This document shows, piece by piece, positions 15,301-46,144 of a DNA stretch of 64,000 bases. The stretch's first letter is position 1. Each line of letters opens with the position of its first letter. The notes under the pieces were generated by a model. It worked only from the letters and a program-made list of their open reading frames with translations. It was not told the origin of the DNA and did not search any database. The translations under genes were made by a program, and so were the position numbers. The stretch comes from Hyphochytrium catenoides (lineage: Eukaryota > Protista > Hyphochytriomycota): assembly GCA_900088475.1 (NCBI GenBank), contig FLMG01002864.1, forward strand, positions 62,001 through 126,000, given 5' to 3'.

Positions 15301-18300
15301 CCGAGACTCTGAGGCACTTTGGGAGGGTAAAGAGCCAAATAGAGAGAACAAAGATTCGACCGTTTGGCGCTTGTCCTTCTTAGTAGTCTCGATTCTTTTC
15401 AGAGTATTTAAAACTTGATCTGCAGCCGCAACCAACGGATCATTGCTTGAGGAATCTCCACCAAAAAAGGAGGATCTTCGGAAAAGCCTTTCTCCCCATC
15501 CCAGTACTTCTGGCTGCCGCTGCAATTGCGGGAACGTTTCTAGCCCTCCACATTCCAGTTCTCTCAGAATACTGCTAAAGCCTGATTGTGGGCTTGGATC
15601 TTCCTCCAGTGTAAGTGAGGGAGAAGGTTGCGGCGAAGAAAAAGGATGCGGTTTCCTATCTGTCCCAAGCACATTTGCCTCCGGTTTGTTTCCATGCCCA
15701 GTGCGATTAGCTGCCGTTACAGCTAAACCTGCTTTCATTCCCGGTTTGCTTGTTGCCCCTGTACCACTTGGAGGTCCTTTGACCTCCATAGTTGGAGGGG
15801 GCCGGAGGGAAGGGTTAGATGGGGCGCGAGGTCCATAAGCATTCGATGGAATGCCTGGTCTCCTGATTCCACCTCTTGCCCTAGCTCGGGCGATAGCCAT
15901 TGCCATGGATGGATCTCTTGGAAGCATTCCTTGGTTGGGGCCATGGGCACCAGGGAATGCAGGTGCCACACGACCAAATGCGGACGCTTTCATTGCGCTC
16001 GTTGCGCCGTGTGGAGAGCTTGAGGAGCTTTCTGAATCTCCCTGCCGACCTGCAGGATCAGAGGTCTGGGGCCAATCTTCCGCCATCTGACCAAGCGAAG
16101 TGTTGGACGCCGAGGACTGCGTGGACAACCTGGTGATTCTCTCTAGCTCATTCGCTTCCACATAAGGGGCCCTGCTGGGACCAAGATCCACGGTAAAGCT
16201 AGAGGGGCTGGCTAAGCTGTCAGGTCCTCCCATTCCCTGAGGGAGTGACCGCCCAGAAGATTGGCCGTACCTGGGAGCGCTCCTATGGCGATGACCCGCG
16301 AGGAACTCTAAAAGCTCAAAGGTTAGACGGCCACTCTTGAAGCCTGCCGTTGCCAAAAGCGCCGAGAAGAATGCTGGATCTGACTTCTCCCCGTGTACCG
16401 TGGTAACCGGAGGAGACCCTTGTGTTGTTATCCCGCCTGCAGCTATAGAAGTGGTAGCACCCCGCGTGCCAGAGATAGAGTCATTTCCTTTACGCGCCAG
16501 TGCAGTGGGACAAGAATGCGGCAAGTGGTGAAACAAGCGGAGCTTCTGGTGGACTATATTTAGGAACATCGTCACCCTGCACTGAGTCCAGTACAAAACG
16601 GTTGAGATCTGGCGGAGTAAGGCGTCGACAGCTGAGGAGCTCCAATTGTACGTCACCAAATGCAGGCCTCCCACTCCGACCTCTATCACGGCGTAGCGTT
16701 GTCTACAGAGATGAGGAAGGCCTGCTAGGTGGAGAGGCACTCCGTCTCCCGTCCCAAGATGTTGATATAGCATAGCCTCCTGATCCGACAAGGAGGGCGG
16801 GCTTAGCTTATGCTGCTCAATGCTTGCCGGCTGAGAACTGGTCGAGCTAGCAATTGACTGTCTTGAGGTTTGTTCTCTGCTTGTGAAGGAGCTCAGTCTC
16901 CTAAGAGATAGGAAAACGTGTAAGCGGAACAGAGATTACGAGAGGCTCCTAACAGCTATATCCTAAGCTTGGGGAGACACAACTACGACTGCGACGTCGT
17001 GATACTATCGGTACAAAGCATGCAGTCTGTTCTGGACTTGGGACTGACATTTTCTGATTTCAGGCCCTCTTACCTCGTTGTCGACCAGCCGTCCCAACAC
17101 AGAATGATGAACTTTCCTTGCTCACGATACGACACAGATGACACGTTCCTACCGTGAAGAAATACCCATTCGAACGTCTGTCCATCCTGGCTGAAGAATA
17201 CCTCTGACATAAGACTTCCATTCAAAGCCCGGAAAATTGGCTGCAGAGTTGATAGCACGTCAGCAGCTACCCATGACGGCAGAATGTCAGTAAAGGAGGT
17301 ACGGAATGTAGATGGGTTCTTGAGGGACGCCGACTCAGCTAGGACACGGCCCAGGAGCTCTACCCAGGTGACGCTCTCCATGTCCACCTTCATCTCCGTC
17401 TCCGCGATATTGTCCCTTTGTTGGCCACCGTCCAACTGCTCCGGGCGTTGTGGGTCGACTTCATACGCAGCAAACAGTTGACCTCGGCGTGCAACGAAGG
17501 TTGACTGTTTGCAACTTCTCAGCAAGCTCTCAGCTGCGTAATCAAGTAACGCCTGGTTGAGAGAGGCAGATAAACGCTGCTGCAGAGCAACAATGTCAAT
17601 TGACCCTCGGGGCCAGACCCTCACCACTATGTTAGCCACCTCAGTGGTCGTCTTTCCCTCTTGCCTTCCTGTTATTGTTTCTTCTACCATAGTCCTCATA
17701 TTTTGTCCTGAGAGTAGCAGTTCTAGCTTAGGTAGATTTAATGCCTTGGAGCTACCGCCTTCTTGACGGCACCAGGGCTCGTCGCTCCCAGGTGAGCTCG
17801 AGCCAGTGCGAAGTTCCACAACTTCTTGACCATGGCAGTCCTCTAAGCTCAAACTAATGACGCACAGCCCTCTGCCAATTGCCGCTCCCTCGGCAAGAGG
17901 AGGCGTATCCGGGGCATTGTTATAAAGAAAGCAGAAGTCCTTCTCGTCGAGAACGGCTGTCACATCATCGGAGCCTCCAGACATAACCGACTCATCTTCA
18001 CTAACACTGGGAGGAGCCCTAGAAAGATTATTGCCTAAATCTTCTCCAAACTCCCCTTTGACCCAGACATGGCCCCAGAAAATAGGAGAGACCGACGAAC
18101 TGTCCCACATGCTGGGATCCGTAAGGTTAATGATTCTTCGCTTCTTGTTAGGGAGATCTCCTCCGACCTCCACACGACCTTTGAGCCACTATTAGCAACT
18201 CTCTAGTAAAAATTAAATCGGACAACTTACCTATAGGTTCCACTACGCTTGGGGTGTCGCCGGCCGCCCTGTCTGACTTCGACTGAGAATAGGCTTCCAA

Positions 18301-21300
18301 AACGCCTTGGAGGGATGTCTCTGCCTTGTACTCCATGCATGATGGATGCAATGCTGTCCAAGCCACCTTTTTCACCTTGTGGTGCTCTTTATCTACCGCT
18401 TTCGGAGTCTGGAAATTCTCATCTCTATATGAAGCAGATACAAGACGAGTAGTGGTTCCCCCTTGCCCTGTTGCTAAGTTGAGGGTATTAAAAAGAGGTA
18501 GCTTGGTAAGGTTTTGCTTGAAAAGGAGAAGAAAAAGGTACCAATCCAATAGTCTCGGTACCCCAGAAGTGGTATATTGAACAGCTTGTGTATTTTCTGG
18601 ACGCAGGAACTGGAGGTCACCTTCACTAAGCTTGAAATGTGGATTGCGGACTAGCAGCGTAGACATTACGGAAAGGGTGATGTCGTCCAATTTTTTCTCT
18701 AGCCATTTTCGTAGCTCCACTGAGATCTCCTGGGTCACACTTGTCACCCCAAACACCTCCAGGAGCAGAGCGGACGATCCTTGCTTCTGATCACCTTGCT
18801 TGTGATCAAGGGCCCAGCTGCTTGTGTCAAGCTCTCCCCTCTCTGTTGATCTCTGTCTCCCAGCACTTCCTAATCGTGAAGCCCGATCTGGACTCGAGGT
18901 AGAGAGTCTGAGGTAGAACACGTTTCCGGTCTTCTCCTTGTAGACGAAGATTTGTTTCCTGTTGGAGACCTGGAATGGGTGTAGAGCGGTATCAACGAGT
19001 TGTCCCATAGCGTAGCGAGGGGTGACGCGCTCATGAAGCGGGAAAATAACGCTGAATTGCTTTTCACAGCTGAACTGGCCACTCCAGTACCAAGTGCAAG
19101 GGACAGTGCCGCCTAGGGAAACCTCAGAGATAACTTTTATGCTGCTTCCTGGCTTTCCAGAAAGCGAGCTTTCCCTTGAGAGTGGCTTCCTGCCAGCTGT
19201 GGTCGCCGTTGCCGATGGCTCAACTGAGTCCCTTTCGTATTGCTTACTAAGTTTAAGATCCTCAAGCGAAGGTGGGATTAGCAGAGAGCTACAAGCGTGT
19301 GTCTCATGCAAATGTTGTAGGAGAAGCAGCTGGTTCACTCTTTCACAAGTCTTGAAAAGACAAACGTTTACTCTCCCAAGGATCTCTACCTTCAATCTCT
19401 CCCACAAAGAACCAGGAGGATGGTGGAAGGACACCCTGGCAATATTGTCCAAACCAACCGACACCATAAGCCAGAAATCCAGATGCTGCTTCACTCCTCG
19501 TTCTTCCTCACGTCTGCCTGAGCGGACTATCAGGAAAACATCTCCAACTTTTTGGATCAGAAGATAAGAGTTCTGCAGCAGCTGCTCCTCAAACATTTGT
19601 TGAGCTCGCTCCGTCTGATGGGCCAATGAAAAAGAAGTTGGGCTGTTGGGGCTGCGGTAAGCTGTCTCTGACATGAGCTCTCCCCTACAGTGGGCGAGTG
19701 AGCACTAACGACGACACTAGCATATAGAATAATGGATGGATATAATGTACCTCTCCTTAGAGTTGTCCGTGCGCATACTACTGCTCTCTGAGAGGGTTTC
19801 TGAGGTTAGAAAACGGAGGGGCACCTCCATGCGACTTAAGTGGCTGCACGGGCACCAACCGAGGACAGCAAAGCAATGGTTAGCACTCTTCTCTTGGCAG
19901 TTTAGGGAAGTGGTAAATGAACAGAAAACAGGTCAAGAAGCTGAGCTGTGGACTTGCCAAAATAGGTCATTATACAACACCGATTACTACGTTCTAGAGG
20001 AGGAAGATGCAAGGACTACAGGCAGCAGCATACCTTGGGAGCAAGTTTGCAATGAGCTTTTTTGCTTGGTTAACCGAGTCAGCGGTAGGAGGACTGACAT
20101 CCTGCAGGCATTTTAGTACTTCCATGGAACTTAGTGCCCTGATGCTTTTTCTCAAAGTAGACATCACTCTCCTATGGACATCTGGGAGAATCTCCAAGCC
20201 ATTGAGCTTCTGAGCCGCTATTGCTGCGTGCTTCGTTAGGCCTCCTTCAGCAAGCTTGCTGATAGGTGCCGATTTCTCTAGCAACTTTTCGTTGGGAAGA
20301 GTAATGCAGACTAAGCGCAGAATTGTTTTTCCATCTGCTTCAACGCTTTGCAAGATAATGCCGCTTGACGTATTACCGGACCGTCCGGACGAACCGTAGC
20401 TTGCCCCATCTGAGTTGGAATGCAGATGAGTCCCCTCCACGCCTACTTAGACGATGAGTACAAAATGAGGATGTAGAGAGCTATAACTCACTTGAGGATA
20501 GACTATAGCGGGAAGGGAAATCTACGGGGTCAGCTTGAAGGAATAGTCTACTCAGAGAGTTAAGCGTAGAGTTAGAACAGACCTAAGATCTCCCTAATGG
20601 CCTGCGAAGGGCTGCTTTGGCGGATCACCAGTGATCTTGACTTTGTAGGCGGAGACTCTACCCTTAAGACCTTTGCTGGAGGATTTGTAAGACATGGTCG
20701 GGCTGGTGGTTGTCGGGATTGCCGATGCAGGCATTCCAGGCGGAGGAAGAGGGGAAACGTGAAGCGAGAAGCGATTGCCGCGGCATCTTCCACTACTTCT
20801 ACTTCCTCGACCTTAGAAGAGGACGACGACGCTTGCGCACCCAGCTCACCGTCACCCTGCTTCAGTAGTCCTTGATCACCTTACACGAAGACATTAGGCA
20901 CGGCAAGAGGGATAGTTCAATGACGAAGCTTTGGATAGACAACTGCTCGGTGGACGGAGTTTTTGATAAAGCAGAATATCTCTAACTAGCCCCGAGTGGC
21001 CCTTAGTCACGAGCAAGGCATAAGTTACAACAGAGCAAGAACCTCATTGAACTGCTGAAAGAATCAATAGCTCGAGCTTACGCCCTTGGTGTGTTTAGCT
21101 AGCCACCTTAAACCATCAGCCGATAAGGCTAGGACGAGAGGTGGGAACAAGAGAATAAAAAGTACGACATCCTACCGGTTGTCAGAATGGATCCAAGAAC
21201 TCCCAGCTCCATGCTGCTGTCACTATCTGAGTCAGCGTCCGCAACAGGTAGTGCTGTAGTTGATGCCGTATCCTTCGTTGCTTGGACTCCACCCTGGCTG

Positions 21301-24300
21301 TTCTCCCCATTTACCTCACCCTCCATTTGCTCACCCTACGAACACGATCAGGAAAGAGGTATGGGCTTAATGCCAATTTGAGACACATGGATCAAGGGAG
21401 CCCGCGTAAGCCTGAAGAATAGGAAACTGGGCCTCTTACTACCTTGGAGTTCTCGTCCTGGATGAAATAATAGTAATCAGTCCCAGGAATGTTTTTAAAA
21501 AAGCGCCCCAGAATTTGTGCGAAGTCATCGTCAAACTTTGAGTCCATCTGATACTCGCCGGTATCTGCTTCAGATCCTAACGAAGGCAGGGTTCGTTGTT
21601 AGTCACAGCTCTGTCACATAGAGTCAATCTCGAAGAAAGTCGTCCCATTATTGGAGCAACTCATTTCTTAACGTTCAAATACTTGCAAATTCTCATAACG
21701 ATGCTCTGGTATAAACCTCTTCAGCATCTTTTTCGCTCCGAGAAGACGATGGTCTTATCTAGAGACAAAGTGTGCGCCTACCTTGGTCTTTGATTCTTCC
21801 GAACCTCATTTTTGCCAGCAAAGTGATATCCATATCTATCGGGATTTCGATACAAGAGAGGATAGCACGGTGGAGGTCGGACGGGTCTACGGCTCCTACA
21901 AAAAGGTGGTGTCACTAGATGCGAAACCTAGAAAGCAATCACCGCAATCTTAAAATTACCTCCCTCCCTCAAAAGCTGGTATACTGCCCTGGAAAAGCTC
22001 TGCTCATGGACTCGGCCAACAATGTCCTTAAATCTCTTCAACGCTTTATCTATGCCCTTTCGCTCAGTAGGCCCGGAATGGCTGGCCCGAGACAAGGGCA
22101 TTGAAGGAAGACCAGCCAGAGGGGATGTTGGTGTAGTCTGGGTGAGAAGTGGGCGAAGAAGAACATTTGTGCTCTCCATTGGAAGGCCAATCCGTAAGCG
22201 GGAGCACTCGTAGAAGGAGATCATGAAGAAGCCCTGGGTGATATCGGCTACCCGTGGAACTAGATGTTTGTCACACCCTGAGCAGGAGGGAGGAGACTCG
22301 GGTAAGCGATTCTTAAGATGCATCAAAAAAAATAGGCTAAGTTGATGAGTTCTCTGGAGTCAGGTGATGACGATCCAATGGTGATCTCACCAGGAGGCGT
22401 TTGAGCTGCTATCCGCGCCTTCTCAAGATCGACGGCCGCTTCTAATGTGGATGTTTTTTGGGCTGCTAGGGTCGCCAATGTGTCCTTTGACTTACGAGCG
22501 AGCAAGCCAAGCTCCTTGTTTCCGCGCTATAATAGTAAAAGTTGGATGTGAGATTGTTAATAAATACTCCCGTGCAGAGTAGTCTCAGCCATCCTTAGTT
22601 GACCCCGCCGGACTCACCTGCAACAAGGCCAAATCATCAAGACAGAAACGTTTAGGTTTCTGTTGAGGACGGTGTACGAAGGTCGGCGGAAGTGATGGGT
22701 AAGAAGAACGACTAAGTATTCTCATAGACATAGAGGCCTGTCGAGGTTCAATCTCAGGGTTGGAGAGAAGCGTTCCCTTCAAGGTCACTGCTCTCAATCT
22801 ATTCACGAGGGGCAGATCCTGGCATTCTTTAAGTGCTGGAAGGAAGCAAAGTACCATCGTCGTGGAGCTCACCATCTGAAATATAGGGCATATCAGAGGA
22901 CTGCATGACGTCTTACTCCTTGTTAAAAAGACTCTCTAGACCAGAGGATATAAGTCTTGGTGAAACAGCTCTCACCTTGGCGAAGCAGCGTCCTGCGCTC
23001 AAACCCTGACCTGCTAAGATCTTCTCCATTGATATAGGATGAGCAGTCTGGGGGAAAACGCCTAAGGTAAGTCGCTCTGTCTATCGGGGCTAATGACAAC
23101 TGCTTCGTCAGGCTCAGTAGAACCTGAACGGCCCACAGTAAAGAAAAGGAGCAAACCGAGAGGACAAATAGTTGCAGTTTACCTCGACGCTGGCTGTACT
23201 GTTCCGACGCTGGAGACCGCTGAAACCCGATCCATCACTACCAATTGTTCTGGTATTTGGATCCATAAATGATGCATCAGAGAGATCAAGGCTGGATCCA
23301 GCGGCAGGCCAAGCCACTTCGCAATCAGTGAGCAACTGCAACGCTCTCTCTAACATCTTATACAGGTTAGTGTTAGCTGATGATAACAAGCCCCTGCTAC
23401 TACTGCCTTCTTTCTCGGAGCTCTGCGATGGCAGGTCAAGCTCATCATCAGAGAGGTCGTGGTAGTTAGATCCACGAGGAGAGCTGCGATTATCCCATTC
23501 GGTGGCCGACATGGCACTGATGGACTCTTCGTTCCCTTGTCCTCCCTGCGCTGGGGTATCTGTGGCCTCAATAAGAAGCCTTCCACCCAAAGCATCTATG
23601 ACGTCTCCTCTAGTGACTATGTCTCCTTGTTCAAGCCAGTCTAGTCTCAGGGAATCCTTGCTGCCTCTCTGAATATTTCTCTGTTCTGCCGCGTCTGCCT
23701 TCTCTCTAAGAGTGGCACGGGCTTGTGGGGACCTTTCAGGAACTATTTTTCTGTCGAATAGCATGGGGAGCGTAAATTGAATCCGCGTAGAGGAGACAAT
23801 TAGACGGAAAGGATTGAAGTCCGCAATCGACGATAGCACTCCATCGTCCACTGGGTCTTTGAGGTAGATTTTGTCGTCGCCTTCCTCTTCAGATTCTACT
23901 TGCTTTACGAGCGAAGCTCCTAGAGTATTACTTCTACTGCGAGTCTCTTCCATTAGACTTCGCTGCATTCAGGAGGGTATGAAACATCAATTCTTAGCGA
24001 CCAGTTGCGATGACAAGCAAGGGGGATAGTAACATAACCACAGTACAGGTGAGTATGGAAACGGAAAATGTTCAGATTCCTGTACACCATGTCGCTAGGA
24101 GGCACCCTGGTCAACCATGAGAATTCACCTTTTGTAGGGCTGAAAAAGTAGCAAGGCTTGATGCGATTTGCTGGTCTGCTCGGTAGAACCTGTAGGAGAG
24201 TAAGCGAAAGAGCTTTCGCTCTCTTACTCTGAGGGTCAGATCGCTATTTGAGCATGCGCCGTCTGATATTCCCAGCCCGTTTGCCGAGGGAGAGAGCAGA

Positions 24301-27300
24301 ATTATAGGCTGGGTACCTGCGTCAACCCTCATGTTCTGAGTATCTACAAGAGTCCCTTCAGGCATAAAGATTTCCTCCAACGGAACAGTGCCCAGGATAG
24401 GGCCTTTTTCTCGGCCATTGCCTTGATACTCCAAGAAATTTGTGCGAACAATCTTTGCCCCCCATGGCCATTCAGACGCCTTGGGAATGGGCAAATCAAC
24501 GGAACCGCTCTGGGGTTCCATCCAAAGGCAGGTCGAGATGGACTTGGAGGTCAACCTCTTTATGGTGTACTGGACTAAGGTAAACCGTGACGTTGAGGAT
24601 GGTGAATTGTCTGAAGCTCCCTCGGCACTAGCTTCCAGGGCAATAAGCTTTACAAAACCGATATACACAACTGTGTCTTCTTGGTCTCGCAAGTCGGCAA
24701 CTTGGAAGCCATCCGCAATGCGCAGTCTCACAAGCAACTCGATGGTCCAATCTGCTACCTGCGGGCTGGGTAGTGTCCACTTCCACTCATTGTGCCAAAG
24801 GTACGACTCAAGAACAGTGGATGAGATCTTGCTGCCACCACAGCACCCTAGGAGCCCAGTGGGGGATCCGGTAGAATGCGATGCCTGAGCGTCGCGAAGT
24901 CTCTCTGAACCCTTGCCATAAGAGAGAGAGGCACGATCTGTCTTGCTAATGACAAGTCGAGCTATATAACGGGGCAAGAGTATAAGGTTACCCTCCGTTT
25001 TCAGAGTGGATATACTTGATGGCTGTAAGGAACGGTATCCCCCTGTCAAGAGGCTGCGCTTGTCTCGAAAGTTCATTGCTCCATCTTCTGTACCTGTTAA
25101 GGACCGGTTCTGATGCTCGCCCATCACACTTTTTGAGGAAGAGAAAACGGAGTGACTAAAGGGCGTTGCAATTAGACCCTTTAGCTCGTCTAGAAGGCCC
25201 ACCCTAAGCGACGGTGGAGTGAGAAAGAAAGCAATGTGCACCGCCGCTAACTGCTGAGTGTCCCAGGCGACTCGGATAAGACAAAAGCTAACAAACTCCG
25301 CCTTCCCTTCCTGCTCGCTATCTTCATTGGCGACGGGTTGCTTTCTGGATGAGATGCGCTTCAAAAAGAGGTCAGACTGGAGGGTATCGGTTGCCCACTG
25401 TGCCAAGATCTGCGTGAGGAGTCGGCGGTTGGCGATGTCACCCCGGAATGTGCTTGCCATTGAAGGGAGTCCAGAGGGCGCGTCGTCGTTTAAGACCTTA
25501 AGAGTCGATGAAGGCCCGCTATGAGAAAATACTGGAGGCTTCAACGATCCACCAGGTTTTGGCACGACTGCAAAGGCACCAAGAGCCCTGGTCCTGCAGA
25601 GCAGCTCAAGTCTTTCCACGTAAAACCAGCGGTGCCAGTACCCAAGAGAGAGATTGCCCACTACTCCCAGGATGGCCTCCACATTGGCGCTAGTCTTCTC
25701 CCTGCGTGGAGTGATAGACTGAGCTCTTGGTGAGAGGCTTCCCCCTCGTCTCCTCTCTGTCACGGTACTCATGGATAAAGCTACAGCATTAAGGTGTACA
25801 AGAACTCTATCTACCTCTTGGATGTCTCTAACGCAAGCCATAATGTTATGTGCAGCGATGTTCTTCGCCGCAGGCGGGCGGGCACCGCTGTCCCCCTCCT
25901 GTTTGTTCCTATTGAGTTGGAGTGTCTTGAGAAAGTCAATGCTGCCAAGCACCTCAATCTTGACTAGTACTTGACGAGGGTAAAATTCGCGACCGTATTG
26001 TAGGGAACGAGGTTGAGTGAATACGTCATGAAGCCCTTTTTGGGCAAGCCCCTTGTTTGGTTGTATAGGTCCTTGTGATCGAACCGTATACTGAATCCAC
26101 ACGTTATGCTGCCAATGGAGAAGGAAGTGGAGACTTACGTCAGGACCGTGCAAAATGCCAGACGTTGACGTTTTGCTTTCCGTGCCCCCACGACTCAGGC
26201 CGTCCTTTTGCACTAGGCTAGGTCCATTTATCTCCCCCGGAGCAGCAATAAAGCGATGGACAAAGAACCCCTCACGTGTTCTCACTTCGAGCAGGCTACC
26301 AATATCAACCTTGATCCGATACTCTTCCAAAGTCTGACGCCATAAGTGCATCAGAAGGGGAACCTCGACCCAGGGACTGTCATTTGAACTGCTACAGAAC
26401 GATTCTTTAAAGACGCTGTTCCTAACAGCGCCGCGACCGAGGGCATTCCCACAACGAGCAGGCGCCGTTTGGGCCAATGACGAACGAAGAAGATCTGCTG
26501 GCTTGGAACTTGGACTGGAAGCCGAGGACCTCCATAGTAGGAGTCGCTGCAGCAGGGGAACTTCGACGTGGTGAAGAGCTGAGTACGTTTCTCCTCCGTG
26601 CCAAGGTATTTTGTAAGATCCTGCACGCAACAACTGCAGGGTTTCGTAGTCTAAAAGCAAGCCTTTAGTAGAATCCGTCAGCAGATGCACCATGTCCGTG
26701 TCCGGAACATAGCCAAAAGGAATATCCGGCCTGAACTCTGTCCCAAGCTGCTTGAACGGGACATGAACGAGTAGTAGAGGGAAAGGGAAAGGTTCAGACG
26801 CAATGAAGCGATTGATATATTTTACCATGAAGAGAGGAAAAGAGTTTAGCCGAGAACTAGAGGAACAAATGAGGTACACACCCGACGGTACCTATAGGGC
26901 TCACCTGGAGCACGTGACAGGTGATGTCATGACAGCAGAGTTCCGCTATAATACTGTCATACTTCGAAATGTTGGGGATTTCAGAGACACAGTCCGTGAC
27001 AAGCACCAGCACAGGAACGGCATCGAGGGGTAGAGCATTGAGGGCAAACACACCGTTCAAAATACAAGTAGTCAAGGAAGTATCATCCTTGTCTGCTTCT
27101 GCATCTTCTAAGGTACTGGTGTTTCGTGCTAAGTCGTTCTCCATTGCAGTCAGATTTTGTCGTACGTCCGCCAATATCTGATCTATATTGCGAGGAGTCA
27201 GGACCGCCCCTTGAATGAGCACCCGCATCTTCTCCAAGCCGGAGTCCTGTACCACTCCATGAGAAGATTTTTGCCAAGAACACCGGGAGCACTTTACGTT

Positions 27301-36500: not shown

Positions 36501-39201
36501 TAGCTAAGGTGGAGCTGAGCGAAGAGAAGTACAATGACTGGTGAGTGCAGATGTCGGCAAGAAGCATGCGAAAGTGAAGCCGGATGAAAGAGAAAATCAT
36601 TCTTGGGATGGGGTTCCAGGGGCAGTTTGAGATAGGGAGACAGAAAATCTGCGATAAGTCAGCGTGAATGTGGCGAAACATTCGAGGACCGGTGTAACGA
36701 CCCGACAAAGAACGGGAAGGAGCAAAGGGTTAGAGGTTAAGATTGGGGCAAGAACACTATGCCGATAAAGAAGGGGGAAATCTTACTCCTAGATTCCTTT
36801 AGGGCAAGGAAGTTTCACGAAGCGGAAGTTTCTATGGAGAATCGAGAGCAGCGTGTCACGGAGCTCATGGATAGCATTGAAACAGATATGACACTTCTTG
36901 GAGTCACCGCCATTGAGGATAAGTTGCAGAAGGGTGTTTCTACGGCTATCCAAAGCTTACGACTCGCAGATATTAGAGTACGTTGTCAGTTTGACAGTTG
37001 AATCTCCTTCAGGCGCAATCTCGCTCCCACAATCCTTCCAGCAGAGTTATCTGTTTTTGTCTGGGGTAACAAGGGTCTTTGTTAGATTGCTGCTTCTTAC
37101 ATCGGCTTAATTATCGGCAGGTCTGGGTTCTGACAGGAGATCGCGTGGACACCGCTATCAACATTGGACTCGCTTGCGGTCTGCTCACTCCAGACATGAA
37201 GCTAATTCAGCTCATCTGCAGCGACAACACCATGCACTGTGATGCAGAAGGTATTCCTAGTAAGGAAGATATTACCACGAAGCTGAAGACAGCAAAGAAA
37301 ATGGGCCTATGTTCCGATCAAGAGTTTGCCCTAGTAGTTGATAGTGGCGCTCTGGAAGCACTGCTGAGGCAAGGACTAGACGATGACTTCATTGAGGTAA
37401 TTCAGAGCTTCTCCTAAGTGTCGTCTGTGCTATGTCTTTAGGTATGCCTTCTCTTATGCATTGTTACACCATCTGTGGGAGGCAAAGAAGCTCCTGCCTC
37501 GCACTCACCAATATCCATGGTCAATAAGTCCCTTAGCCTTATACACACGCTCTCTTTCCATAGCTTTCTATCAGGTCATCCCGAGCTCCTTTCTTGGTCT
37601 ATGCATCCTCACAAGATTCATACTCACATCGTTCTCGTTTTGTTTCCCTTTGACTTTCTTAGTTGAGCAGCAGATGCAAGTCGGTAATCTGCGCCAGAGT
37701 CAGTCCAAACCAAAAGGGCGAGGTGGTCAATTTAGTTAAGCATAAAACATCGGCCGTTACTCTGGCTGTCGGCGATGGGGCCAACGATGTTCCCATGATC
37801 CAGTGTGCCCACGTCGGAGTAGGCATTGTGGGACAGGAAGGGCTGCAAGCAGTGAATGCCAGCGACTTCTCAATAGCGCAATTCCGCTTCTTAGAGAGAC
37901 TACTACTTGTGCACGGCAGGTAATTGACGAGGGCGGGGCCGACATAGATTACCACGCCGTTCAGTTGTTTGTCACGCTTCTCTTGCCCCTTGCCCCACGT
38001 AGCTAACTGGTCTTTGTCACCCCTGCTCTCACTGTCTAGGTGGTCATTGCGCCGTCTGTGCAAAGTCACGATGTATATGTTCTATAAAAATGCACTGCTG
38101 GTGTTGCCACAGTTCTACTACGGCTTTCGCACTCTTTTCTCTGGGCAGAACTTCTACAACGATTACCTCTATCAGCTCTACAACGTCGTATTCACCGCCT
38201 TCCCGGTCATCCTGATGGGTGTGCTGGACCAGGATGTTAATGCGAAGACGGCGCTAAAGCATCCGCAGATCTATAGTGAGGGAGTTAGAGGAGTCTTTCT
38301 CAATCACAGAAAGTTTTGGGTAAGCATGTCCTCTTTCTCTTTATCATGTTCTGTCATCTTAAGGAAAAGACTAGTTGGACTTCGCCTACAAATCTTCCAC
38401 ATCATATAGTTGGGCTCCTTCGCACGTGGTGCTGCTCTGGCGCAGTTGTTGCAGCTCTGACAGATTCGATATTCACTCCTTGCTAATTGTGCTTTGTAGG
38501 CTTACATGGTCGAGGCAACGGTCAATGCTGGCTTCGTGTTCCTCTTCCCGGCCCTTGCGTTTGGCTATGGGGTACACGGGCATAGCGGGAAAGTGAACGG
38601 AATGTGGGACTTTGGAATCCAGGTAAGATTCTCAGATCGCTAGATCTCCTTCGTTGGGTAGCCTCGTCGCTAGCTTCATATATCGTTTGCCGGGCTGGCC
38701 TTTCCTATACTCCAGTTTTGACAGTGGTTGTGTGGTCTCTTGTCTCTGATTCGCACTCGTCGCGCTGATCAACCCTCCGTCCGACTCTCTCTCGGGATTT
38801 TTGTCTAGATGAACTTCCTCGTCGTAATGGTGGCGCATCTTCGTATTGCTATTGACATCAAGTACTGGATCCAAGCCACCACTTTCTTCTTCGCCGTGTC
38901 AGTATTAATGTGGCTGGCAGCAGCCTTTGTCTTTTCAGCTAACGAGACATTGGGAACGCAGATCTACAACCGCGTTCCTATAGTTATGTCGACCGTGCAG
39001 TTCTGGGCCACGGTCTTCGCTGTACTAATGACAGTCTTTATCGGGTTTTTGGTGACAAGAGGATGGAAGCTCATGAAGAATCCTGAGTTTAGCGATCATT
39101 GCAGAGAGGAGCAAGAGGGGTTAGGTGCCCATGATGATGATCTGAAGTCACAGCTAAAGCTGTGGAAAAAAGAGCCTGCAATGCTTTGCACAGAGAACTA
39201 G
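33506..39201 (+). CDS. P4-type ATPase (phospholipid flippase)
   Basis: [53 protein letters not shown], phosphorylation motif [58 protein letters not shown]. An N-gap lies at 35385-35460. Confidence 0.97.
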
Positions 39202-40494
39202 GCGCAGATTGTTATCTGAGTCTTACTTCTATGCTGTGCAACACCCACATTAGCAACGTTATTCAGGACATAGCTGTCAGAGACAGGATATCCTAACAGA
39301 AACAAAGCTCGCAGCACTTGAGCTATTTATATCCTTCTGATGGCGCTCTCTCGTTTGTTAGTTGCTAGTAAACAGCTGTCAGAAGCACGAACAGACTTTC
39401 GTCTTTCAGGACATTGGCAGCAAGGATAAATTCATTCCTTCATGTCCAGCGACCTGCGGCTGTGAGTTCTCCCAGTCTGCACATGTTGCTTGCCACGAGC
39501 AAGTTTGCTTTGATGTTGATTCCTCGACTTCTGTCTGATGTAGCATACTATCACATTGTTCCCTTACGCTTCCCATATCCCAAATATCTCGGAGGACCAG
39601 CAACTGACATCATCGCCAGATGAGGTCGTTTGACCCTTTAGCAAGCAAACCTCAACGCAGGGTAGAGTAAAGAGCGACGCTGTGGATGGAATGGCCTTAA
39701 CGCTTGTATCTGCTCAGCCTATTTACGAAAAACGTTTATGGCAGCGGTCTCATCTGCTTTTCACCACAAGCTCTTGTAGCTGCTGCTGTTGCCATGCAGC
39801 ATTCATCTTGGCCCACTCCGTAGTTCTCCTGGACTTTCTCCTAGAGCGGGCTCCGTTACACTGGACCCACGACAATGCAAAGCAATTCCAGGGTTGAGCA
39901 CGCTATAGCTCTGTCCAAGGCGTGTCATCGTGGACCATCACGAAGAAGCGGCGCCCCTGTCTCGTGTCTGTCCAGCTCCTGTGTGGGTAGGTCGCGTTAC
40001 ATAGGAAGAGGTGGTGGTTGAAGTGCCCAAGATGCAGAGAAAACTTGACACTTGACAGCTGATGAGCGGCCATTATTCTGGAGCGGCTATACAATGTTAG
40101 TGAATATATAACGCATAACGATACTAGTCAGGAATAAGGGCCATTCTTATGTTCCCAGCTCCAAATTTTTTTCTGTCGGGCCATGGAGTGCATCGATCAT
40201 GCATCTCCAGAAGCACCTTCGCGCTGACTGACAGTAAGGCGAAGACGTTCTGAAGTTCTGGGTATTCGAAGCTCTGGCACCCTCTGTACCGCCATCGGTG
40301 CCAATCTTCATGTGCGCGTGAAAGTCCCCACGTCCAGCTCCGCAAGCTCTAACCTTCTGACAGCGGGGACTAACTCCTACCTCCTCGGGGTCCCTGGTGA
40401 CTAGCCCATAGGAATCCTTCGCTCTCGTTAGTTCTATAGACAAATGCTTCTTAAGAACCTCCGTGCAAAGGAGAGGCCCCACGGCTAGGGAAGA

Positions 40495-42862
40495 ATGGGG
40501 CTGAATTGCTCCAGACAGTCAGTATGGCTGCCAAGCGGCAGGCAATCGATTGTGAAGTTCTCCGATCCTGAACGGTAACAGCCCTCTCGTGATCGTGTCT
40601 AATTGTCTCTAGCTCCTTTCTCTTGCCGTAGCTCTGACATGCCTTCATTGTCTCTCTTTATCTTTACCTTCTTGCTGCCCCTCACCTTCCTCCTGGTCAA
40701 TGTCAAGTCCTGAAGCTGGTAGTCGTTATGGCAAGAATAGTCTGAGCTACATTAAGCTTGCAACGGTCTATAAAAGGGATGGGAGGCTTAAGACAATCTG
40801 GCGTGAGATGACAATGGTCGTTACAGAGTCAGCCATCCTCCTCTACAAGGACAAGACTGACGTCCAGCTCTCAGGTCCCATATTATAGCCTTTCACTCCT
40901 TTGGTTCCACCTCATCTGTGGGATTAACCTTAAAATCTATGTTCCCCATCTCTCTTGGACTGCCCTGCTTCCCTTTTGTCTTGGGTGCAGCATGAACTCC
41001 ATCAATCTTTGAATGTTCCTCCTCCTCCTTGTCATCAATATCGCGGCGCTTGGATCGCCTCCTTATGATTAGAGTCTTCTCTTCCCTATGATCTGATTTA
41101 TCAACCATGCTCCACTTGATGTTCTTCGTGCCTTACTCTTAGCGTTTCTCTCCTAACAAATCTTTATCCTAGACCCACATCTAGTGATCGACGTGGGGAA
41201 TATTCGCGCCGTTCAGAAGCGGCTCGTCTGGTCATCACTACACGCCTTCAAAGTAAAACTCTACCGCGGCCGAAGCGTCACACTTGCGTGCAGCACCAAG
41301 GAAGAGGTGAGGCGGGGCAGAAAAGCTCGCTAGCAAGATTTAACATGTTGAGAGAATTCTGTTTGAATAGGATAACTATCCTATCCCTGAAGTTAGATGA
41401 CGTTTTGGCCTAGGATAGATTAGTATCTGAGGACGTGCAAAGACTCTAACCTGTGGTGCTCTTCTTTCGCAAACTGGGATATCTCGATCCCTGTTCCAGC
41501 TGGAGGATAGTCTCGAGACTCTGCATCGGCTGCGGAACTCTTCCATCACCAGCTCTCCTAGGTAGGAAGTCCTCTCATGTCCTCTCCTGCTTCAAGTCAC
41601 TTAATTCTGAGAGCACGGGCTAACGGTCGTAATAACTCAGCGAAGGGGATTCGTTATACTTCAGGGAGCCCGAGCCATCTCTCTTCGCTGATGGGCCTGA
41701 AAAGGCTTCCGTTGAAAGAGCCTTTCAAAGGCAAGTGGGTCATGGTTACCGAATCACATTTATCATGAAGCTCAACACTTTGCTGCTCGCATTGTATCTC
41801 CTTCCTGGTCAATGTTGCGTACACACTTTTTAACAAGTAGGTATGCAGATGAGATTGACTCCAATCTTATAATAGATGATGGGATAGTTGCGCTCCGGAC
41901 AGATCTTGAAGACGACAAGGTAGTTACACTCTAAGAGTATGTCCAAGATCACACTGGAGCACTCATCAATGTGCCTTTTTCTATCACTGTATTTCTCTCT
42001 TGTATGGACCCACAAGGACGAGTTACTCATGTACATTCTGGCTTGGTATGCCCGATCGGAGACGCTGAACGTCCTGACCAAACCAGAGTTCGAGCGCCTC
42101 CTGAAAGCGACCGGTACAACNNNNNNNNNNNNNNNNNNNNNNNNNNNNNNNNNNNNNNNNNNNNNNNNNNNNNNNNNNNNNNNNNNNNNNNNNNNNNNNN
42201 NNNNNNNNNNNNNNNNNNNNNNNNNNNNNNNNNNNNNTGCCAAACCTCAAAGCGGAACTCCTGGGAGAGTTATTCCCTGAGTTCTACCGTTTCTGCTTCA
42301 CATTCTCGCTGAACGAAGGAGAGTATAGCGTGCCTAAGGTGCGACTTTGTCCCCTTCATCGTGTCCTCTTGATATTCGAACCGGTAGCATAAAAAGCTTT
42401 GGTGGCGGTTTCTTCCGCTCACAGAATCTGTTCGCCTCCCATGACACATAATTGGATGGAAGATACGGCCAGATCTAATCGGGGACTTGTATGCAGGAAT
42501 GGGCTGTTCCCTTATGGCTTGCAATCCTGAAAGATCAGTATCCAGTAGCTACCTACTGGTGCACATTTCTAGAGGTAAAGTAGCTCACTTGCTGTCTAGG
42601 GGCTTGACGTTGGTGGATGCTGACCAATTTTCTGTAGCAAAGACCCGACATCGAGACTGTTGACGAGGAGTTATGGACGGAGTTTTTTATTTATTTGAGG
42701 CGTCAGGAGACCATACAACCCCACGATGAAGGGTAAGCCTGAGCCCTACTCCCCGATAATAGATGGGCTCATAACCCTCATCTCTGCAGCCCAAAGCTTG
42801 GCCCTCTTCTAGAGCAATTTCAGTCATGGCTGCTGGACAGCAAGAACATGATATCGTTATAG
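40495..42862 (+). CDS. N-acylation motif + PH domain + DCN1/PONY (cullin-binding) domain fusion protein
   Basis: Exon 1 encodes MGLNCSRQ..DPER. PH-like segment: VYKRDGRLKTIWREMTMVVTESAILLYKDK..PHLVIDV..AFKVKL..SVTLACSTKEELED. DCN1-like segment: FQRYADEID..IIDDGIVALRTDL, LMYILAW..LTKPEFER, FPEFYRFCFTFSLNEGE, AVPLWLAIL..YWCTFLE, VDEELWTEF, LLEQFQSWL. TAG at 42860-42862. One stretch crosses the gap at 42121-42237. Confidence 0.8.
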
Positions 42863-43028
42863 CTCCGTCTCCCAAGAAGTCAAACTCTGGTATCTATCTC
42901 TCGTCCGGTGCCTCTCGTTGTCGATCTGCATTGCAGATCGAACACATCCCTACCAGCAGTGCTTAGCTTTCGCGACGGCACTATCAAAGATATTTATTCC
43001 ATCTAATTATGTGGCCTATCCATGCAGA

Positions 43029-43083
43029 GCCCTGCTACGCTTTCCATTGCGTAATGTTGCCCTGCTACGCTTTCCATTGCGTA
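43029..43083. repeat. 30-bp-period tandem duplication with a small internal hairpin
   Basis: gccctgctacgctttccattgcgta occurs at 43029 and 43059; each copy contains tacgc-N8-gcgta. Confidence 0.85.
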
Positions 43084-43288
43084 CCTCCACCCATTCACAC
43101 ATAGCTCTCGTAGGAGAAGTGTACGGGAAAGGTTTGTCGTTCTAAGCATCCTGGTTAAAGGCCTTTCGATACCAATGGAGGCAACGGCATGCAAGAGCAA
43201 CAGCTTCACATCTAGCCCACCAGGATGGATTCTTTCCACAGGATGCTGAGCGTTGCACATTGAAAAGCGAAATTACTTTATGCTGTGG

Positions 43289-46144
43289 TTACTTCATGCT
43301 AAATGCAAATGCAGATGACAACACGTCTTCCTCATCAAATAAGCCTGTTGGAGCGCGAAAGTTGAGTGGGGGGCCCTTCTTCTCCTTCGCCGAAATTTGT
43401 TGGTCAAACAACACCTTGTAAGTGAAGTCAACGAACTCAGAAAGCTCGTACTTCGGTTGCTTCTCTATTTTCTCCTCAAACGCCTGCAGAGTCTGGTGTT
43501 AGGACTGGAGGTCTACGTAACAAAGAGGCATGCCAGAGTAGAGCCAAAATGGTATCGACTAAACCTCGAGGACTAAGAAGAGAGGGAGTTTAAGAGACAA
43601 TAGGTGCATCTGGCAGTAAGTTTTTTGTCCATACCGCCCCCATTGTGGCCACAGCAGGGTTATAATGGCTCTTCATGGTATGGAGCTCCCAAAGAGAGCT
43701 ATCAAGTGCCCCACACTTTGCCATATCCAAAAGCTCTGGACGGAAAGGATCTCTTCCAGTGGAATCTGTGTTTCGTTCGCCAGTGCGGTGAATAAGTATC
43801 CGCAGCTCCGGGTGCCTCAGGAGCTGGTTGGAGGCGAACGGCATGATGAATAGGAGAGCCGCGGGTGGAGCTGTCAAGCTCATGCGTGACAACTTTTTGA
43901 CAAAAGCTGCCACCACATAGATTGGGAGGTGTGAGGAAGACAAAAAGAGATCGAGGAGGTAGAAGAACCTCGCCCTGCATGAGTAGAGTCAGGTGTTACT
44001 TTGATTGATATGAATGGAAGCGCAAGCCAAGGGCTAGATGTTGAAGGAACACAAGTGAACACATTAGTATGGGTGGAAGAGTGCTTGACGTGGGCGATAG
44101 TCGTTTGGGAAGCCCATACCTGTACTGAGCATGCAGGACGGATGGTTCGAGCAGCGAGTAGAGCTTATCATAGAACTTGGGGTAGTCTAGATTGTGCTCG
44201 GTGATAAGGACAAAGAGCCCATTCAGAGCTAGAAGGCTATCCGCTCCGCCTACCGCAGCCAGGATAGAAGATATAGAGACACAGTCAAGAAGCAAAGTGA
44301 GAACAAGCTCAGCGCAATAGCCCCTGATCCTGGCAGCGACGAGCTTACCGAGGTTGTATGAGTCTGTAAGAAAGTCCGAAAGGAGGATGGGCTGCGACAT
44401 GAACGGAATCACCTTCTCCGGAAGACGTAGTAGGATTTTCCGATACACTTCTTTGGCCAGCGGAAGACGCAGGAGCGCAACCCAAGCGGCACTGAAGGCT
44501 TTCTTCACACTTTTGCTGTTGAACGCTGTGTGCCTGTCCCCATGGTCTAGCTCTGAAGCTTTTCGCTTCCCGCCAGTATCTTCATCTGGCAAAGAGAAAG
44601 TCTAAACAGTGAGGATCCACACCTATTTGAGAGGGAGCAAAGATGTGGACTGAACCTACCGCTGCTCTCCTCACTCTCTTCCTCTTCGGACACCCTGGCC
44701 AGCCTGGGTCGAAGAGAGTCTCCAACATCTACTAGAAGGGTATCTAAGCTTAAGAAGTACTGTTGCGGTTTAACCTGTCCATGCAAACCGTGAGCTTTAC
44801 ATGACAAGATAGAGTGACAGACCGTCATTCCACTTACGCATGTAAGGAGGTCAAAGGCATTAGTAGAGAAGTCCTCAGGCGAGCATTTATCTAATTCCGA
44901 CGGCCCCTCCGCTCCTGCTTGCAAGGATTTATTCTGCATACTTCTTCTTTTCGTCTCTATGAGGCTGTGAATATTGGCCAGCTAGAGGTGACGTTAGGCG
45001 GCCTGAATGAGGTAGCGGCCAGGCATACCGGAAAGGCAACAAAGGTAGAAAAAGGTAACAACAGGGGCCGCAGCAGTTGGCTTCTTCAACAAATTGTAAT
45101 GAAACACTTACCAGGTAGTGCCGGACGTCAGCGTAAGGTGCAACATATTCTCCCTTGAACACGCTTAGCAGCTCACCCTTCAGGTGGCTGGTGATAAGCT
45201 ACAGTTGTAAGGGGCGATCCCAATCATCAGGACAGTGGAGTCACGTAGGCGGGTTCGAGAGCCAGTGCCAACACAAGAATAGTTTTTCGGAGAGGATGAA
45301 GGCGTTGGAGGACACATGTTTGACAAACGAAGGAAGAACAAAGAGGCAGCATGGAGGACGTACCAGCTTCTTCACGACACGGGAGAACGTCTCGTTTCCG
45401 AACCTTTTATCTTCAAAACCTTTCAGATCGCCCTCTCGAGCCACGAACTCCATCAACGTCCGAAGTGAGAGGACCTTCAGACAGGGCCGAATGACATAAG
45501 TTGATATGAAAGGGATTAAAGCCAACTCTTTAATAGAGAAGGATTAGGAAGTAAGACGGCCGGCGACACACCTGCAGATGTGTGTCTTGGGAATCGAGTA
45601 ACCGCAATAAATAGTCAAAGTACTTGGACGCTTGGCTCCACAACCAGCTCCTGAACTTCTCAAGAGGAGAATCTCCTCCAGCTTCCGCATCTTCTTCAAC
45701 ACCTTCAGTGAGTGTCTTCCTTTTTTTTCCTGGGTTAATGCTACTCAGCCTTCCCAAGAAGTGACGGTCAACAGGTCTCGGGAGCGATTGCCTTACTCTG
45801 TGCTGCCCTGAGATCTCCGTTGTCAATCCAGTAAATAAATAGCCTCCTAAGAGAGTTTAGTGCAGCCTGCCGAATCGCCGCAACCTGCAAGAGACTATGT
45901 CAGGAACTTAATAGACCTCCATCCTCGTGTCAACAGTCTCACCTCTGACTTCTGCAGCAGCTTCTGAAGCTCCAGTATTCCTGCAGAGGAGAGTGTGAGC
46001 TCTAAGAACGGGATGATAAGCTCTCTTAAACTGACCATTAGCCTCGGTAGTCGACCCTTTTATCCGCGTCTCCGATAACTTTATCCTAGCGACGACGGCT
46101 TCCGTGTCCTCCTTTTCTTCCTTCTTCTCAGGAACCCTCCCCAT
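43289..46144 (-). CDS. NOC4L: Nucleolar complex protein 4 (CBF/Mak21 domain)
   Basis: FSAAWVALL..YRKILL..VIPFMSQPILLSDFLTDSYNLG, SLLALNGLFVLITEHNLDYPKFYDKLYSLL, SSHLPIYVVAAFVKKLSR, ALDSSLWEL..SHYNPAV. TAA at 43289-43291. Confidence 0.95.

What the first reader, a model, noticed from the sequence alone, without database searches (positions are those of the whole stretch)
40495..42862. Predicted membrane-targeted PH-DCN1 fusion: a lipid-responsive cullin neddylation regulator?
Seen: spliced exons give MGLNCS (MGxxxS myristoylation consensus with Cys5 as a possible palmitoylation site), then a PH-like domain, then a full DCN1/PONY domain. Known: Dcn1/DCUN1D proteins are neddylation co-E3s whose N-termini carry a UBA domain, an NLS, or in DCUN1D3 a myristoylation site. 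I know of no PH-DCN1 architecture. Inference: acylation plus a phosphoinositide-binding PH domain could restrict cullin-RING ligase control to a specific membrane, convergent with DCUN1D3. The ORF track misses this gene because it is split over about ten short exons and a gap.
Basis: partly seen in the sequence, partly recalled or inferred. Interest (0 to 1): 0.8.

Follow-up and report, generated by a model that had tools for sequence, protein, structure and literature searches.

The report
PH-like domain fused to divergent DCN1
This protist gene of eleven short exons most likely joins a lipid-binding-type (PH-like) domain to a divergent copy of the DCN1 domain that helps switch on cullin ubiquitin ligases, but no RNA data confirm it and its cullin-binding residues are altered.

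Summary
A + strand gene can be built at 40495-42862. It has eleven exons of 62-167 nt, ten introns (GT-AG, one GC-AG), an open frame over exons 1-7 and another over exons 8-11, and the stop at 42860-42862.

- **DCN1 part.** Exons 6-9 are real DCN1/PONY sequence. Each beats 300 shuffles against the genome's three canonical DCN1 paralogues, in the same order, and the intron after "FLE" is shared.
- **PH part.** Exons 2-3 look PH-like by weak but independent signals.
- **One gene.** The PH and PONY parts are separated by a 79-nt intron, and the PONY part has no start codon of its own.
- **Gap.** The gap (42121-42237) covers the rest of intron 7 and about 11 codons of exon 8. The flanks are not in one frame. 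No second copy could fill it.

Weak points:
- No RNA run was listed.
- The MGLNCS start is one of several possible first exons.
- The PONY C-terminus is divergent. The cullin-binding DAD patch reads E/L/E and AWP reads LGP.

No orthologue and no paper on a PH-DCN1 fusion were found. Domain-architecture databases could not be queried. The scan noted this same stretch before (s1-342080), not other DNA.

Verdict: a plausible new variant of a known family, of moderate interest.

The parts
40495..40574 (+). Exon 1 (predicted): ATG in strong context (gaagaATGG), encodes MGLNCSRQSVWLPSGRQSIVKFSDPE; donor GTAACA
   Evidence: In-frame stop two codons upstream. Fits G-{EDRKHPFYW}-x(2)-[STAGCN]-{P} by reading. 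One of 65 in-phase candidates. Frame preferred by codon score. Unverified.
40575..40707 (+). Intron 1, 133 nt, 71% pyrimidine like intron 2
   Evidence: composition table
40708..40874 (+). Exon 2: first half of the PH-like domain (IKLATVYKRDGRLKTIWREMTMVVTESAILLYKDK), with a basic cluster in the presumed beta1-beta2 loop
   Evidence: Pfam PH E=0.052, profile 7-36. Atlas 0.93, 43 of 100 hits PH. phmmer 7xPH protein 7.9e-4. BLASTP to PH repeat positions 1-36.
41173..41306 (+). Exon 3: second half of the PH-like domain (HLVIDVGNIRAVQKR...HAFKVKLYRGRSVTLACSTKEE)
   Evidence: Atlas 0.84, 8 of the 10 best in the PH clan. No Pfam or PDB hit on its own.
41500..41561 (+). Exon 4: presumed C-terminal helix of the PH-like domain (LEDSLETLHRL) and start of a Ser-rich linker; if intron 4 were retained, a TAG follows at once
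41562..41640 (+). Intron 4, 79 nt, with CTAAC branch-like site; the join between the PH and PONY halves
41641..41730 (+). Exon 5: linker and PONY start (KASVERAFQ|R); GC donor AG|GCAAGT
   Evidence: FQRYA is identical to paralogue L003 KIEELFQRYA.
41841..41919 (+). Exon 6: PONY (YADEIDSNLIIDDGIVALRTDLEDDK)
   Evidence: tblastn to L001 1e-3; shuffle p<=0.0033
42017..42113 (+). Exon 7: PONY (DELLMYILAWYARSETLNVLTKPEFERLLKATG)
   Evidence: tblastn to L002 8e-4; shuffle p<=0.0033; donor in the Gly codon where the paralogues have an intron
42121..42237 (.). Assembly gap: hides the rest of intron 7 and about 11 codons of exon 8 (paralogues read ADSVDRLKGKL / CETLQQLKAKL there)
   Evidence: No second copy in the genome.
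42240..42338 (+). Exon 8, readable part (PNLKAELLGELFPEFYRFCFTFSLNEGEYSVPK); its 5' end lies in the gap
   Evidence: Pfam Cullin_binding 13.3 bits, profile 17-38. PDB DCN1-like protein 2, E=0.16. tblastn to L003 5e-3.
42497..42574 (+). Exon 9: PONY (EWAVPLWLAILKDQYPVATYWCTFLE); the phase-0 intron after FLE is shared with L001 and L003
   Evidence: tblastn to L001 7e-7, 50% identity
42638..42732 (+). Exon 10: divergent PONY part (…VDEELWTEFFIYLRRQETIQPHDEG); DTW reads ELW
   Evidence: alignments. No PDB hit, whereas the same exon of paralogue L003 hits nine DCN1 structures.
42790..42862 (+). Exon 11: PKLGPLLEQFQSWLLDSKNMISL, stop TAG. The canonical AWP is readable only in another frame (42796-42804).

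Best explanation
One protein-coding gene of about 360 codons on the + strand. It is a lineage-specific paralogue of the DCN1 (DCUN1D/DCNL) family. In place of the usual UBA-like N-terminus it has a PH-like domain, possibly preceded by an N-myristoylation signal.

Inferred mechanism:
- The N-terminal module holds the protein on a membrane, through PH-lipid or PH-protein contact plus an acyl anchor.
- The PONY domain acts there. It either promotes NEDD8 transfer to a cullin, as DCNL3 does at the plasma membrane, or mainly binds or sequesters the NEDD8 E2 or a particular cullin, because its cullin-binding patch is non-canonical (E/L/E for D/A/D, LGP for AWP).

Shown here: the exon chain, the PONY homology, and the physical linkage of the two halves. 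Inferred only: the PH fold, acylation, lipid binding, and any neddylation activity.
For: - **Exon chain.** Canonical splice borders and consistent phases run over ten introns to a stop at 42860-42862, a protein end comparable to the paralogues.
- **PONY homology.** E6-E9 are collinear with the two PONY exons of L001, each p<=0.0033, Fisher 4e-6. The PH exons serve as a negative control, p=0.57.
- **Other DCN1 signals.** tblastn gave 7e-7 to 5e-3, Pfam Cullin_binding hit E8 and PDB DCN1-like protein 2 hit E8.
- **Intron positions.** The phase-0 intron after FLE is shared, and the intron in the Gly codon after '...ERIG/TRLG' is shared.
- **PH-like signals.** They come from two separate exons.
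- **Linkage.** Intron 4 is 79 nt, and no in-frame ATG precedes exon 7 in the PONY frame.
- **Coding signal.** The codon-position GC pattern and frame preference of E1-E3 resemble known exons.
- **Family context.** The same genome has UBA-PONY and SAP-PONY paralogues, so N-terminal module swapping occurs in this family here.
- **Copy number and neighbours.** The gene is single copy. It lies between a P4-ATPase gene and a CBF/Mak21 gene.
- **Literature.** DCNL N-termini set localisation, and DCNL3 is myristoylated and at the plasma membrane (PMC4886823).
Against: - No RNA run was listed for the stretch.
- No single exon passes a curated Pfam cut-off.
- E3 and E4 have no family hit.
- The PH helix lacks the usual Trp.
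- E10 and E11 are not significantly DCN1-like.
- All three DAD positions differ.
- The first exon is not unique.
- About 11 codons are unseen in the gap.
- No orthologue of the PH exon was found among 1.84 billion representatives or in the metagenome contigs, so there is no conservation evidence.
Confidence: 0.65

Rival explanations
1. The gene is real, but translation starts at the ATG at 40700 or from another first exon. The protein is then PH-like plus PONY without the MGLNCS acylation signal. Any membrane targeting would rest on the PH-like domain alone.
For: - An ATG at 40700 opens the same frame 8 nt before the proposed exon 2 acceptor.
- 65 in-phase ATG-to-donor candidates lie upstream.
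- E1 has no homologue anywhere.
Against: - The ATG at 40700 has a weak context (T at -3, T at +4), while 40495 has A at -3 and G at +4.
- 40575-40707 is 71% pyrimidine, like intron 2.
- E1 prefers its predicted frame in the codon score.
Confidence: 0.3
2. A decaying or non-functional DCN1 paralogue. The PONY C-terminus has lost its cullin-binding motif after frame-shifting indels, and the locus is little expressed or not at all. The open frame would be a remnant.
For: - AWP is readable only in another frame, which looks like the footprint of two compensating 1-nt changes (note s1-365065).
- E10 and E11 are not significantly similar to DCN1.
- No RNA holder was listed.
Against: - All eleven exons are open, with intact splice sites and a normal stop.
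- The frame was restored after the presumed shift, and the C-terminal helix (LLEQFQSWLL) is kept, which suggests selection.
- The acidic DAD positions are kept as Glu.
Confidence: 0.15
3. The N-terminal exons do not form a PH domain. They would be another small beta-rich module, or wrongly predicted exons, so the 'PH-DCN1' architecture would be an over-reading.
For: - The Pfam hit is only 14.5 bits, against a cut-off of 25.1.
- PDB searches of E2 and E3 find no PH domain.
- E3 does not align to the PH repeat of P0003.
- Atlas scores below 0.9 are leads only.
- The split-domain complex test gave no answer.
Against: - Two exons point independently to the PH clan.
- The residue pattern follows PH strands and the closing helix, by my reading.
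- Exon phases fit only this chain.
Confidence: 0.2
4. Two separate genes or transcripts: a small PH-only protein ending at the TAG just after exon 4, and a DCN1 gene starting downstream.
For: If intron 4 is retained, the frame stops at once (SSPR*). No RNA data tie the halves together.
Against: - Only 79 nt separate the halves, which leaves no room for a terminator and a promoter.
- The PONY frame has no ATG until inside exon 7, which would cut off the first helices.
- Intron 4 has GT, a CTAAC-like branch site and AG.
Confidence: 0.07

Closest known systems
DCUN1D3 / DCNL3 (animal membrane-bound DCN1-like protein)
   Same: A C-terminal PONY domain preceded by a non-UBA N-terminus that carries a myristoylation site and places the protein at the plasma membrane (PMC4886823). 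The window gene may likewise begin with MG...S.
   Different: DCNL3's N-terminus is short and predicted to be unstructured, with no PH domain. DCNL3 keeps the DAD patch and AWP. Here they read E/L/E and LGP. No evidence of common descent of the N-termini.
DCN1 / DCUN1D1-2 (UBA-PONY neddylation co-E3)
   Same: Homologous PONY domain. A canonical copy exists in the same genome (L001: UBA_4 E=4e-5, GAWPVLIDDF).
   Different: The UBA is replaced by a PH-like domain. The PONY domain is far more divergent: single exons of the paralogues hit PDB DCN1 structures, and those of the window gene do not, apart from a marginal E8 match (E=0.16).
SAP-PONY paralogue of the same genome (G000:C3719, L003)
   Same: Another DCN1 copy with a swapped N-terminal module. 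It shares the intron after the FLE-equivalent position, and the FQRYA motif.
   Different: It has a SAP (DNA/chromatin-type) module instead of a PH-like one, and it keeps DTW, YDEEG and AWPVMIDDF.

Membership tests
DCN1 / PONY domain (Pfam PF03556 Cullin_binding) | Match to the family profile above the curated cut-off (27.9 bits) | tested here: inconclusive
Exon by exon, only E8 matches: 13.3 bits, profile 17-38. The six-frame genome scan finds the three paralogues but not this gene.
DCN1 / PONY domain (Pfam PF03556 Cullin_binding) | Collinear sequence similarity to bona fide DCN1 proteins over the domain | tested here: met
   E6-E9 each p<=0.0033 against the paralogue loci, in order, Fisher 4e-6. 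E9 7e-7. PDB DCN1-like protein 2 for E8. E10 and E11 are not significant.
DCN1 / PONY domain (Pfam PF03556 Cullin_binding) | Invariant DAD patch for cullin binding (yeast D226, A253, D259) and the GAWP motif | tested here: not met
   Aligned positions read E (ELW for DTW), L (LGP for AWP) and E (LLEQF for LIDDF). The definition is from PMC4886823.
DCN1 / PONY domain (Pfam PF03556 Cullin_binding) | Intron positions shared with family members of the same genome | tested here: met
   The phase-0 intron after FLE is shared with L001 and L003. The intron in the Gly codon after ...ERIG/TRLG is shared, with a phase difference of 1 nt next to the gap.
DCN1 / PONY domain (Pfam PF03556 Cullin_binding) | Binding of the N-acetylated NEDD8 E2 and stimulation of cullin neddylation | not testable with these tools
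   Needs biochemistry. The joined domain could not be folded or docked.
PH domain (Pfam PF00169, PH clan) | Profile match above the cut-off (25.1 bits) | tested here: inconclusive
   E2 alone: 14.5 bits, E=0.052, profile 7-36. E3 and E4: none.
PH domain (Pfam PF00169, PH clan) | Seven-strand beta sandwich closed by a C-terminal helix | not tested
   Needs the joined exons 2-4. Indirect signals only: Atlas features put E2 (0.93) and E3 (0.84) in PH-clan clusters. The split-chain fold test gave no answer.
PH domain (Pfam PF00169, PH clan) | Phosphoinositide-binding basic motif in the beta1-beta2 loop | tested here: inconclusive
   YKRDGRLKTIWR has four basic residues, but not the exact K-Xn-(K/R)-X-R spacing that I recall. 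This is reading only.
N-myristoylated proteins | N-terminal M-G-{EDRKHPFYW}-x-x-[STAGCN]-{P} | tested here: met
   MGLNCSR fits by direct reading. It only counts if 40495 is the true start, which is unverified.

The most novel reading that the evidence does not exclude
This would be the first PH-PONY protein: a membrane- and lipid-targeted DCN1 paralogue in a hyphochytrid-like stramenopile. Its rewired cullin-binding patch would pair it with a particular cullin or make it a membrane sink for the NEDD8 E2. It would belong to a lineage-specific set of DCN1 copies with swapped targeting modules (UBA, SAP, PH).
Probability: 0.3. Interest if true: 0.55.

Novelty: new variant of a known kind. Interest (0 to 1): 0.4.

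Why it matters
DCN1-like proteins are thought to direct cullin neddylation to particular places through their variable N-termini, but few such modules are known (UBA, a myristoyl tail, an NLS). A PH-like module would tie cullin-RING ligase activation, or its restraint, to membrane lipid identity, and that link could be tested directly. The changed DAD patch is also a natural experiment on how much of that 'invariant' surface is needed. The value is limited because the principle is already accepted, the organism is not a model, and expression is unproven.

Tried and rejected
- **RNA support.** The look-up of sequencing runs listed none, so read laying could not be used.
- **Orthologues of the PH exon.**
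  - The big representative search with E2 gave only repeat artefacts and a 7xPH protein.
  - The metagenome scan with E2 found none. E3 was too short for that tool.
- **Reaching a near relative's copy of the locus (Logan run SRR28521185, 93-95% DNA identity at a paralogue).**
  - Word search with four local ORFs as tags found none.
  - With the neighbouring genes' exons it found only distant homologues of 50% identity or less.
- **Filling the gap from another copy.** Only self-matches were found.
- **PDB searches with single exons.** All were blank or weak.
- **Complex prediction with E2 and E3 as the two halves of a split PH domain.** It gave no answer, which is neither support nor evidence against.
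- **Literature.** No PH-DCN1 paper was found.
- **Alternative splice readings rejected.**
  - A GT donor instead of the GC donor at 41731 leads to stops.
  - The acceptor at 42795/96 leads to a stop.
  - The AG at 42251/52 as the start of exon 8 is rejected because the homology (PNLKAELL) continues upstream of it.
- **Assembly error as the cause of LGP for AWP.** I judged this unlikely. It needs two compensating errors within 15 nt in an Illumina-based assembly, if this is the Hyphochytrium assembly of PMC5795050.

Full report
**What is in the sequence**

Reading 40200-43200 and translating the three + frames gives a chain of eleven short open segments. They can be joined by ten introns:
- E1 40495-40574
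- E2 40708-40874
- E3 41173-41306
- E4 41500-41561
- E5 41641-41730
- E6 41841-41919
- E7 42017-42113
- E8 ?-42338
- E9 42497-42574
- E10 42638-42732
- E11 42790-42862

Every border is GT...AG except the donor of E5, which is AG|GCAAGT, the usual form of a GC donor. E1-E7 join into one frame of 236 codons. E8-E11 join into one frame that ends at TAG 42860-42862.

The gene lies between a + strand P4-ATPase C-terminal exon (38809-39201) and a - strand CBF/Mak21 gene (43996-44592). It is single copy in the 61-Mb genome.

**The gap, tested first**

- The left flank ends "...LLKAT G|GTACAAC". The GT falls in the Gly codon at the point where all three DCN1 paralogues of this genome have an intron (ERIG|, TRLG|, KL(R/S)|). 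The phase differs by one base from theirs.
- The right flank opens with PNLKAELLGELFPEFYRF. This matches paralogue "LPELRAELENPSKFRDFFRF" and "LPELRTQLEDEKSLKEIYMYSF".
- In between, the paralogues have 11 residues (CETLQQLKAKL, ADSVDRLKGKL).
- The gap therefore hides the rest of intron 7 and about 33 coding bases of exon 8.
- Read as one continuous exon, the flanks would be out of frame at the nominal gap length. 42113 to 42240 is 127 nt, and the two sides sit in different frame classes. Because the length is only estimated, this says little.
- The same-strand, same-order continuation of the PONY homology across the gap supports the scaffold join.
- No other contig of the genome carries either flank.

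**The DCN1/PONY half**

Exon-by-exon family scans are weak because the pieces are only 23-33 residues:
- Cullin_binding scores 13.3 bits on E8.
- PDB DCN1-like protein 2 matches E8 at E=0.16.
- The other exons give nothing.

The genome itself supplies the better test. A six-frame scan with PF03556 finds three other DCN1 loci.
- tblastn of the window exons against them gives collinear hits: E9 7e-7 (50% identity), E6 1e-3, E7 8e-4, E8 5e-3.
- In a shuffle test, E6, E7, E8 and E9 each beat all 300 shuffles. E6 and E7 have their best match in the first PONY exon of L001, and E8 and E9 in the second. The Fisher p is about 4e-6, limited by the number of shuffles.
- The PH exons serve as a negative control, p=0.57.
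- The phase-0 intron after "...FLE" is shared with L001 and L003.

The homology is therefore real.

It is, however, a divergent copy. Single exons of the canonical paralogues hit PDB DCN1 structures at 1e-13 and 3e-3. The corresponding window exons hit nothing. E10 and E11 are not significant even against the paralogues.

Aligned to the paralogues:
- DTW reads ELW.
- GAWP reads KLGP.
- LIDDF reads LLEQF.

The three DAD-patch residues, described as invariant and needed for binding all cullins (PMC4886823), are therefore E, L and E. AWP can be read at exactly the canonical place, but only in another frame (42796-42804). Together with the conserved helix downstream in the gene's frame, this looks like the footprint of two compensating one-base changes, as note s1-365065 proposed. 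I did not resolve this further.

**The PH-like half**

- E2 gives Pfam PH at E=0.052, profile positions 7-36.
- E2 gives an Atlas feature score of 0.93, with 43 of 100 nearest clusters being PH.
- In the search of 1.84 billion representatives, E2 finds one real family hit, a protein with seven PH domains, at 7.9e-4. E2 aligns to positions 1-36 of its repeat.
- E3 points independently to PH-clan clusters, at 0.84 with 8 of the ten best. It has no Pfam, PDB or pairwise hit.
- By reading, the residues follow the PH pattern: ...YKRDGRLKTIWREMTMVVTESAILLYKDK... / ...HLVIDVGNIRAV...HAFKVKL..RSVTLACSTKEE / LEDSLETL. The usual helix Trp is missing.
- The codon-position GC pattern (0.54/0.42/0.61) and the frame preference of E1-E3 resemble known exons.

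I put a PH-like fold at about 0.8. Lipid binding is an inference from the basic loop.

**One gene or two**

The join between the halves is a 79-nt intron with GT, a CTAAC-like site and AG. The PONY frame has no ATG before the middle of exon 7. Two separate genes are therefore unlikely. If intron 4 were retained, a PH-only protein ending SSPR* would result, and only RNA data can exclude that isoform. No RNA run was listed.

**The N-terminus**

MGLNCSR fits the myristoylation pattern, the ATG at 40495 has a strong context, and intron 1 is pyrimidine-rich like intron 2. Against that, 65 ATG-to-donor combinations upstream would also be in phase, and an ATG at 40700 could start the protein without E1. 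I put MGLNCS at about 0.6.

**Context**

- The genome has 4759 records. This matches the 4758 scaffolds plus mitochondrion of the Hyphochytrium catenoides assembly (PMC5795050). Earlier notes call the organism an oomycete relative. This is consistent with that identification, not proof of it.
- The same genome holds a UBA-PONY copy (L001) and a SAP-PONY copy (L003). In L003 the second SAP exon runs on into KIEELFQRYAG.
- N-terminal module swapping is thus a feature of this family here, and it agrees with the accepted view that DCNL N-termini set localisation.

**Mechanism and novelty**

The most likely reading is a membrane-placed DCN1 paralogue, analogous to DCNL3. Its activity on cullins is uncertain because of the altered patch. 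It may serve a particular cullin, or it may sequester the NEDD8 E2.

No orthologue was found and no paper was found. Domain-architecture databases could not be queried, and the exon-sized queries have low power.

I rate this a new variant of a known kind, with interest 0.4.

Noticed in passing
L003 (G000:C3719:8516-11656) 156-308 and 340-576, + strand: A DCN1 paralogue with a SAP domain split over two exons (profile 4-18 and 18-33, E about 2-3e-3 each). The second exon continues without a stop into the PONY start KIEELFQRYAG. This is an apparent SAP-DCN1 architecture that I do not know from the literature.
   Followed up: partly
window 42790-42810: The canonical AWP of DCN1 is encoded at the right place, but in a frame one base off the gene's frame, which reads LGP. 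This looks like two compensating one-base changes. It was also noted as s1-365065.
   Followed up: partly
window 41731-41840: Intron 5 has a GC donor (AG|GCAAGT). Every GT alternative leads to stops.
   Followed up: yes
L008 (Logan SRR28521185 contig) against L001: A public run holds a contig 93-95% identical in DNA to the canonical DCN1 paralogue locus, so a near relative or a divergent strain has been sequenced. Its copy of the window locus could not be reached.
   Followed up: partly
L002 (G000:C1310:173936-177304), - strand: The third DCN1 paralogue has an intron inside the Trp codon of AWP (T|GG). L001 and L003 have theirs in the preceding Gly codon, and the window gene two codons earlier. 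Intron positions around this motif drift within the family.
   Followed up: partly
window 13700-19674 and 24111-26879, - strand: There are long open frames (367-922 aa) with no Pfam family at E<=0.001. They are possibly lineage-specific genes or mobile elements.
   Followed up: no
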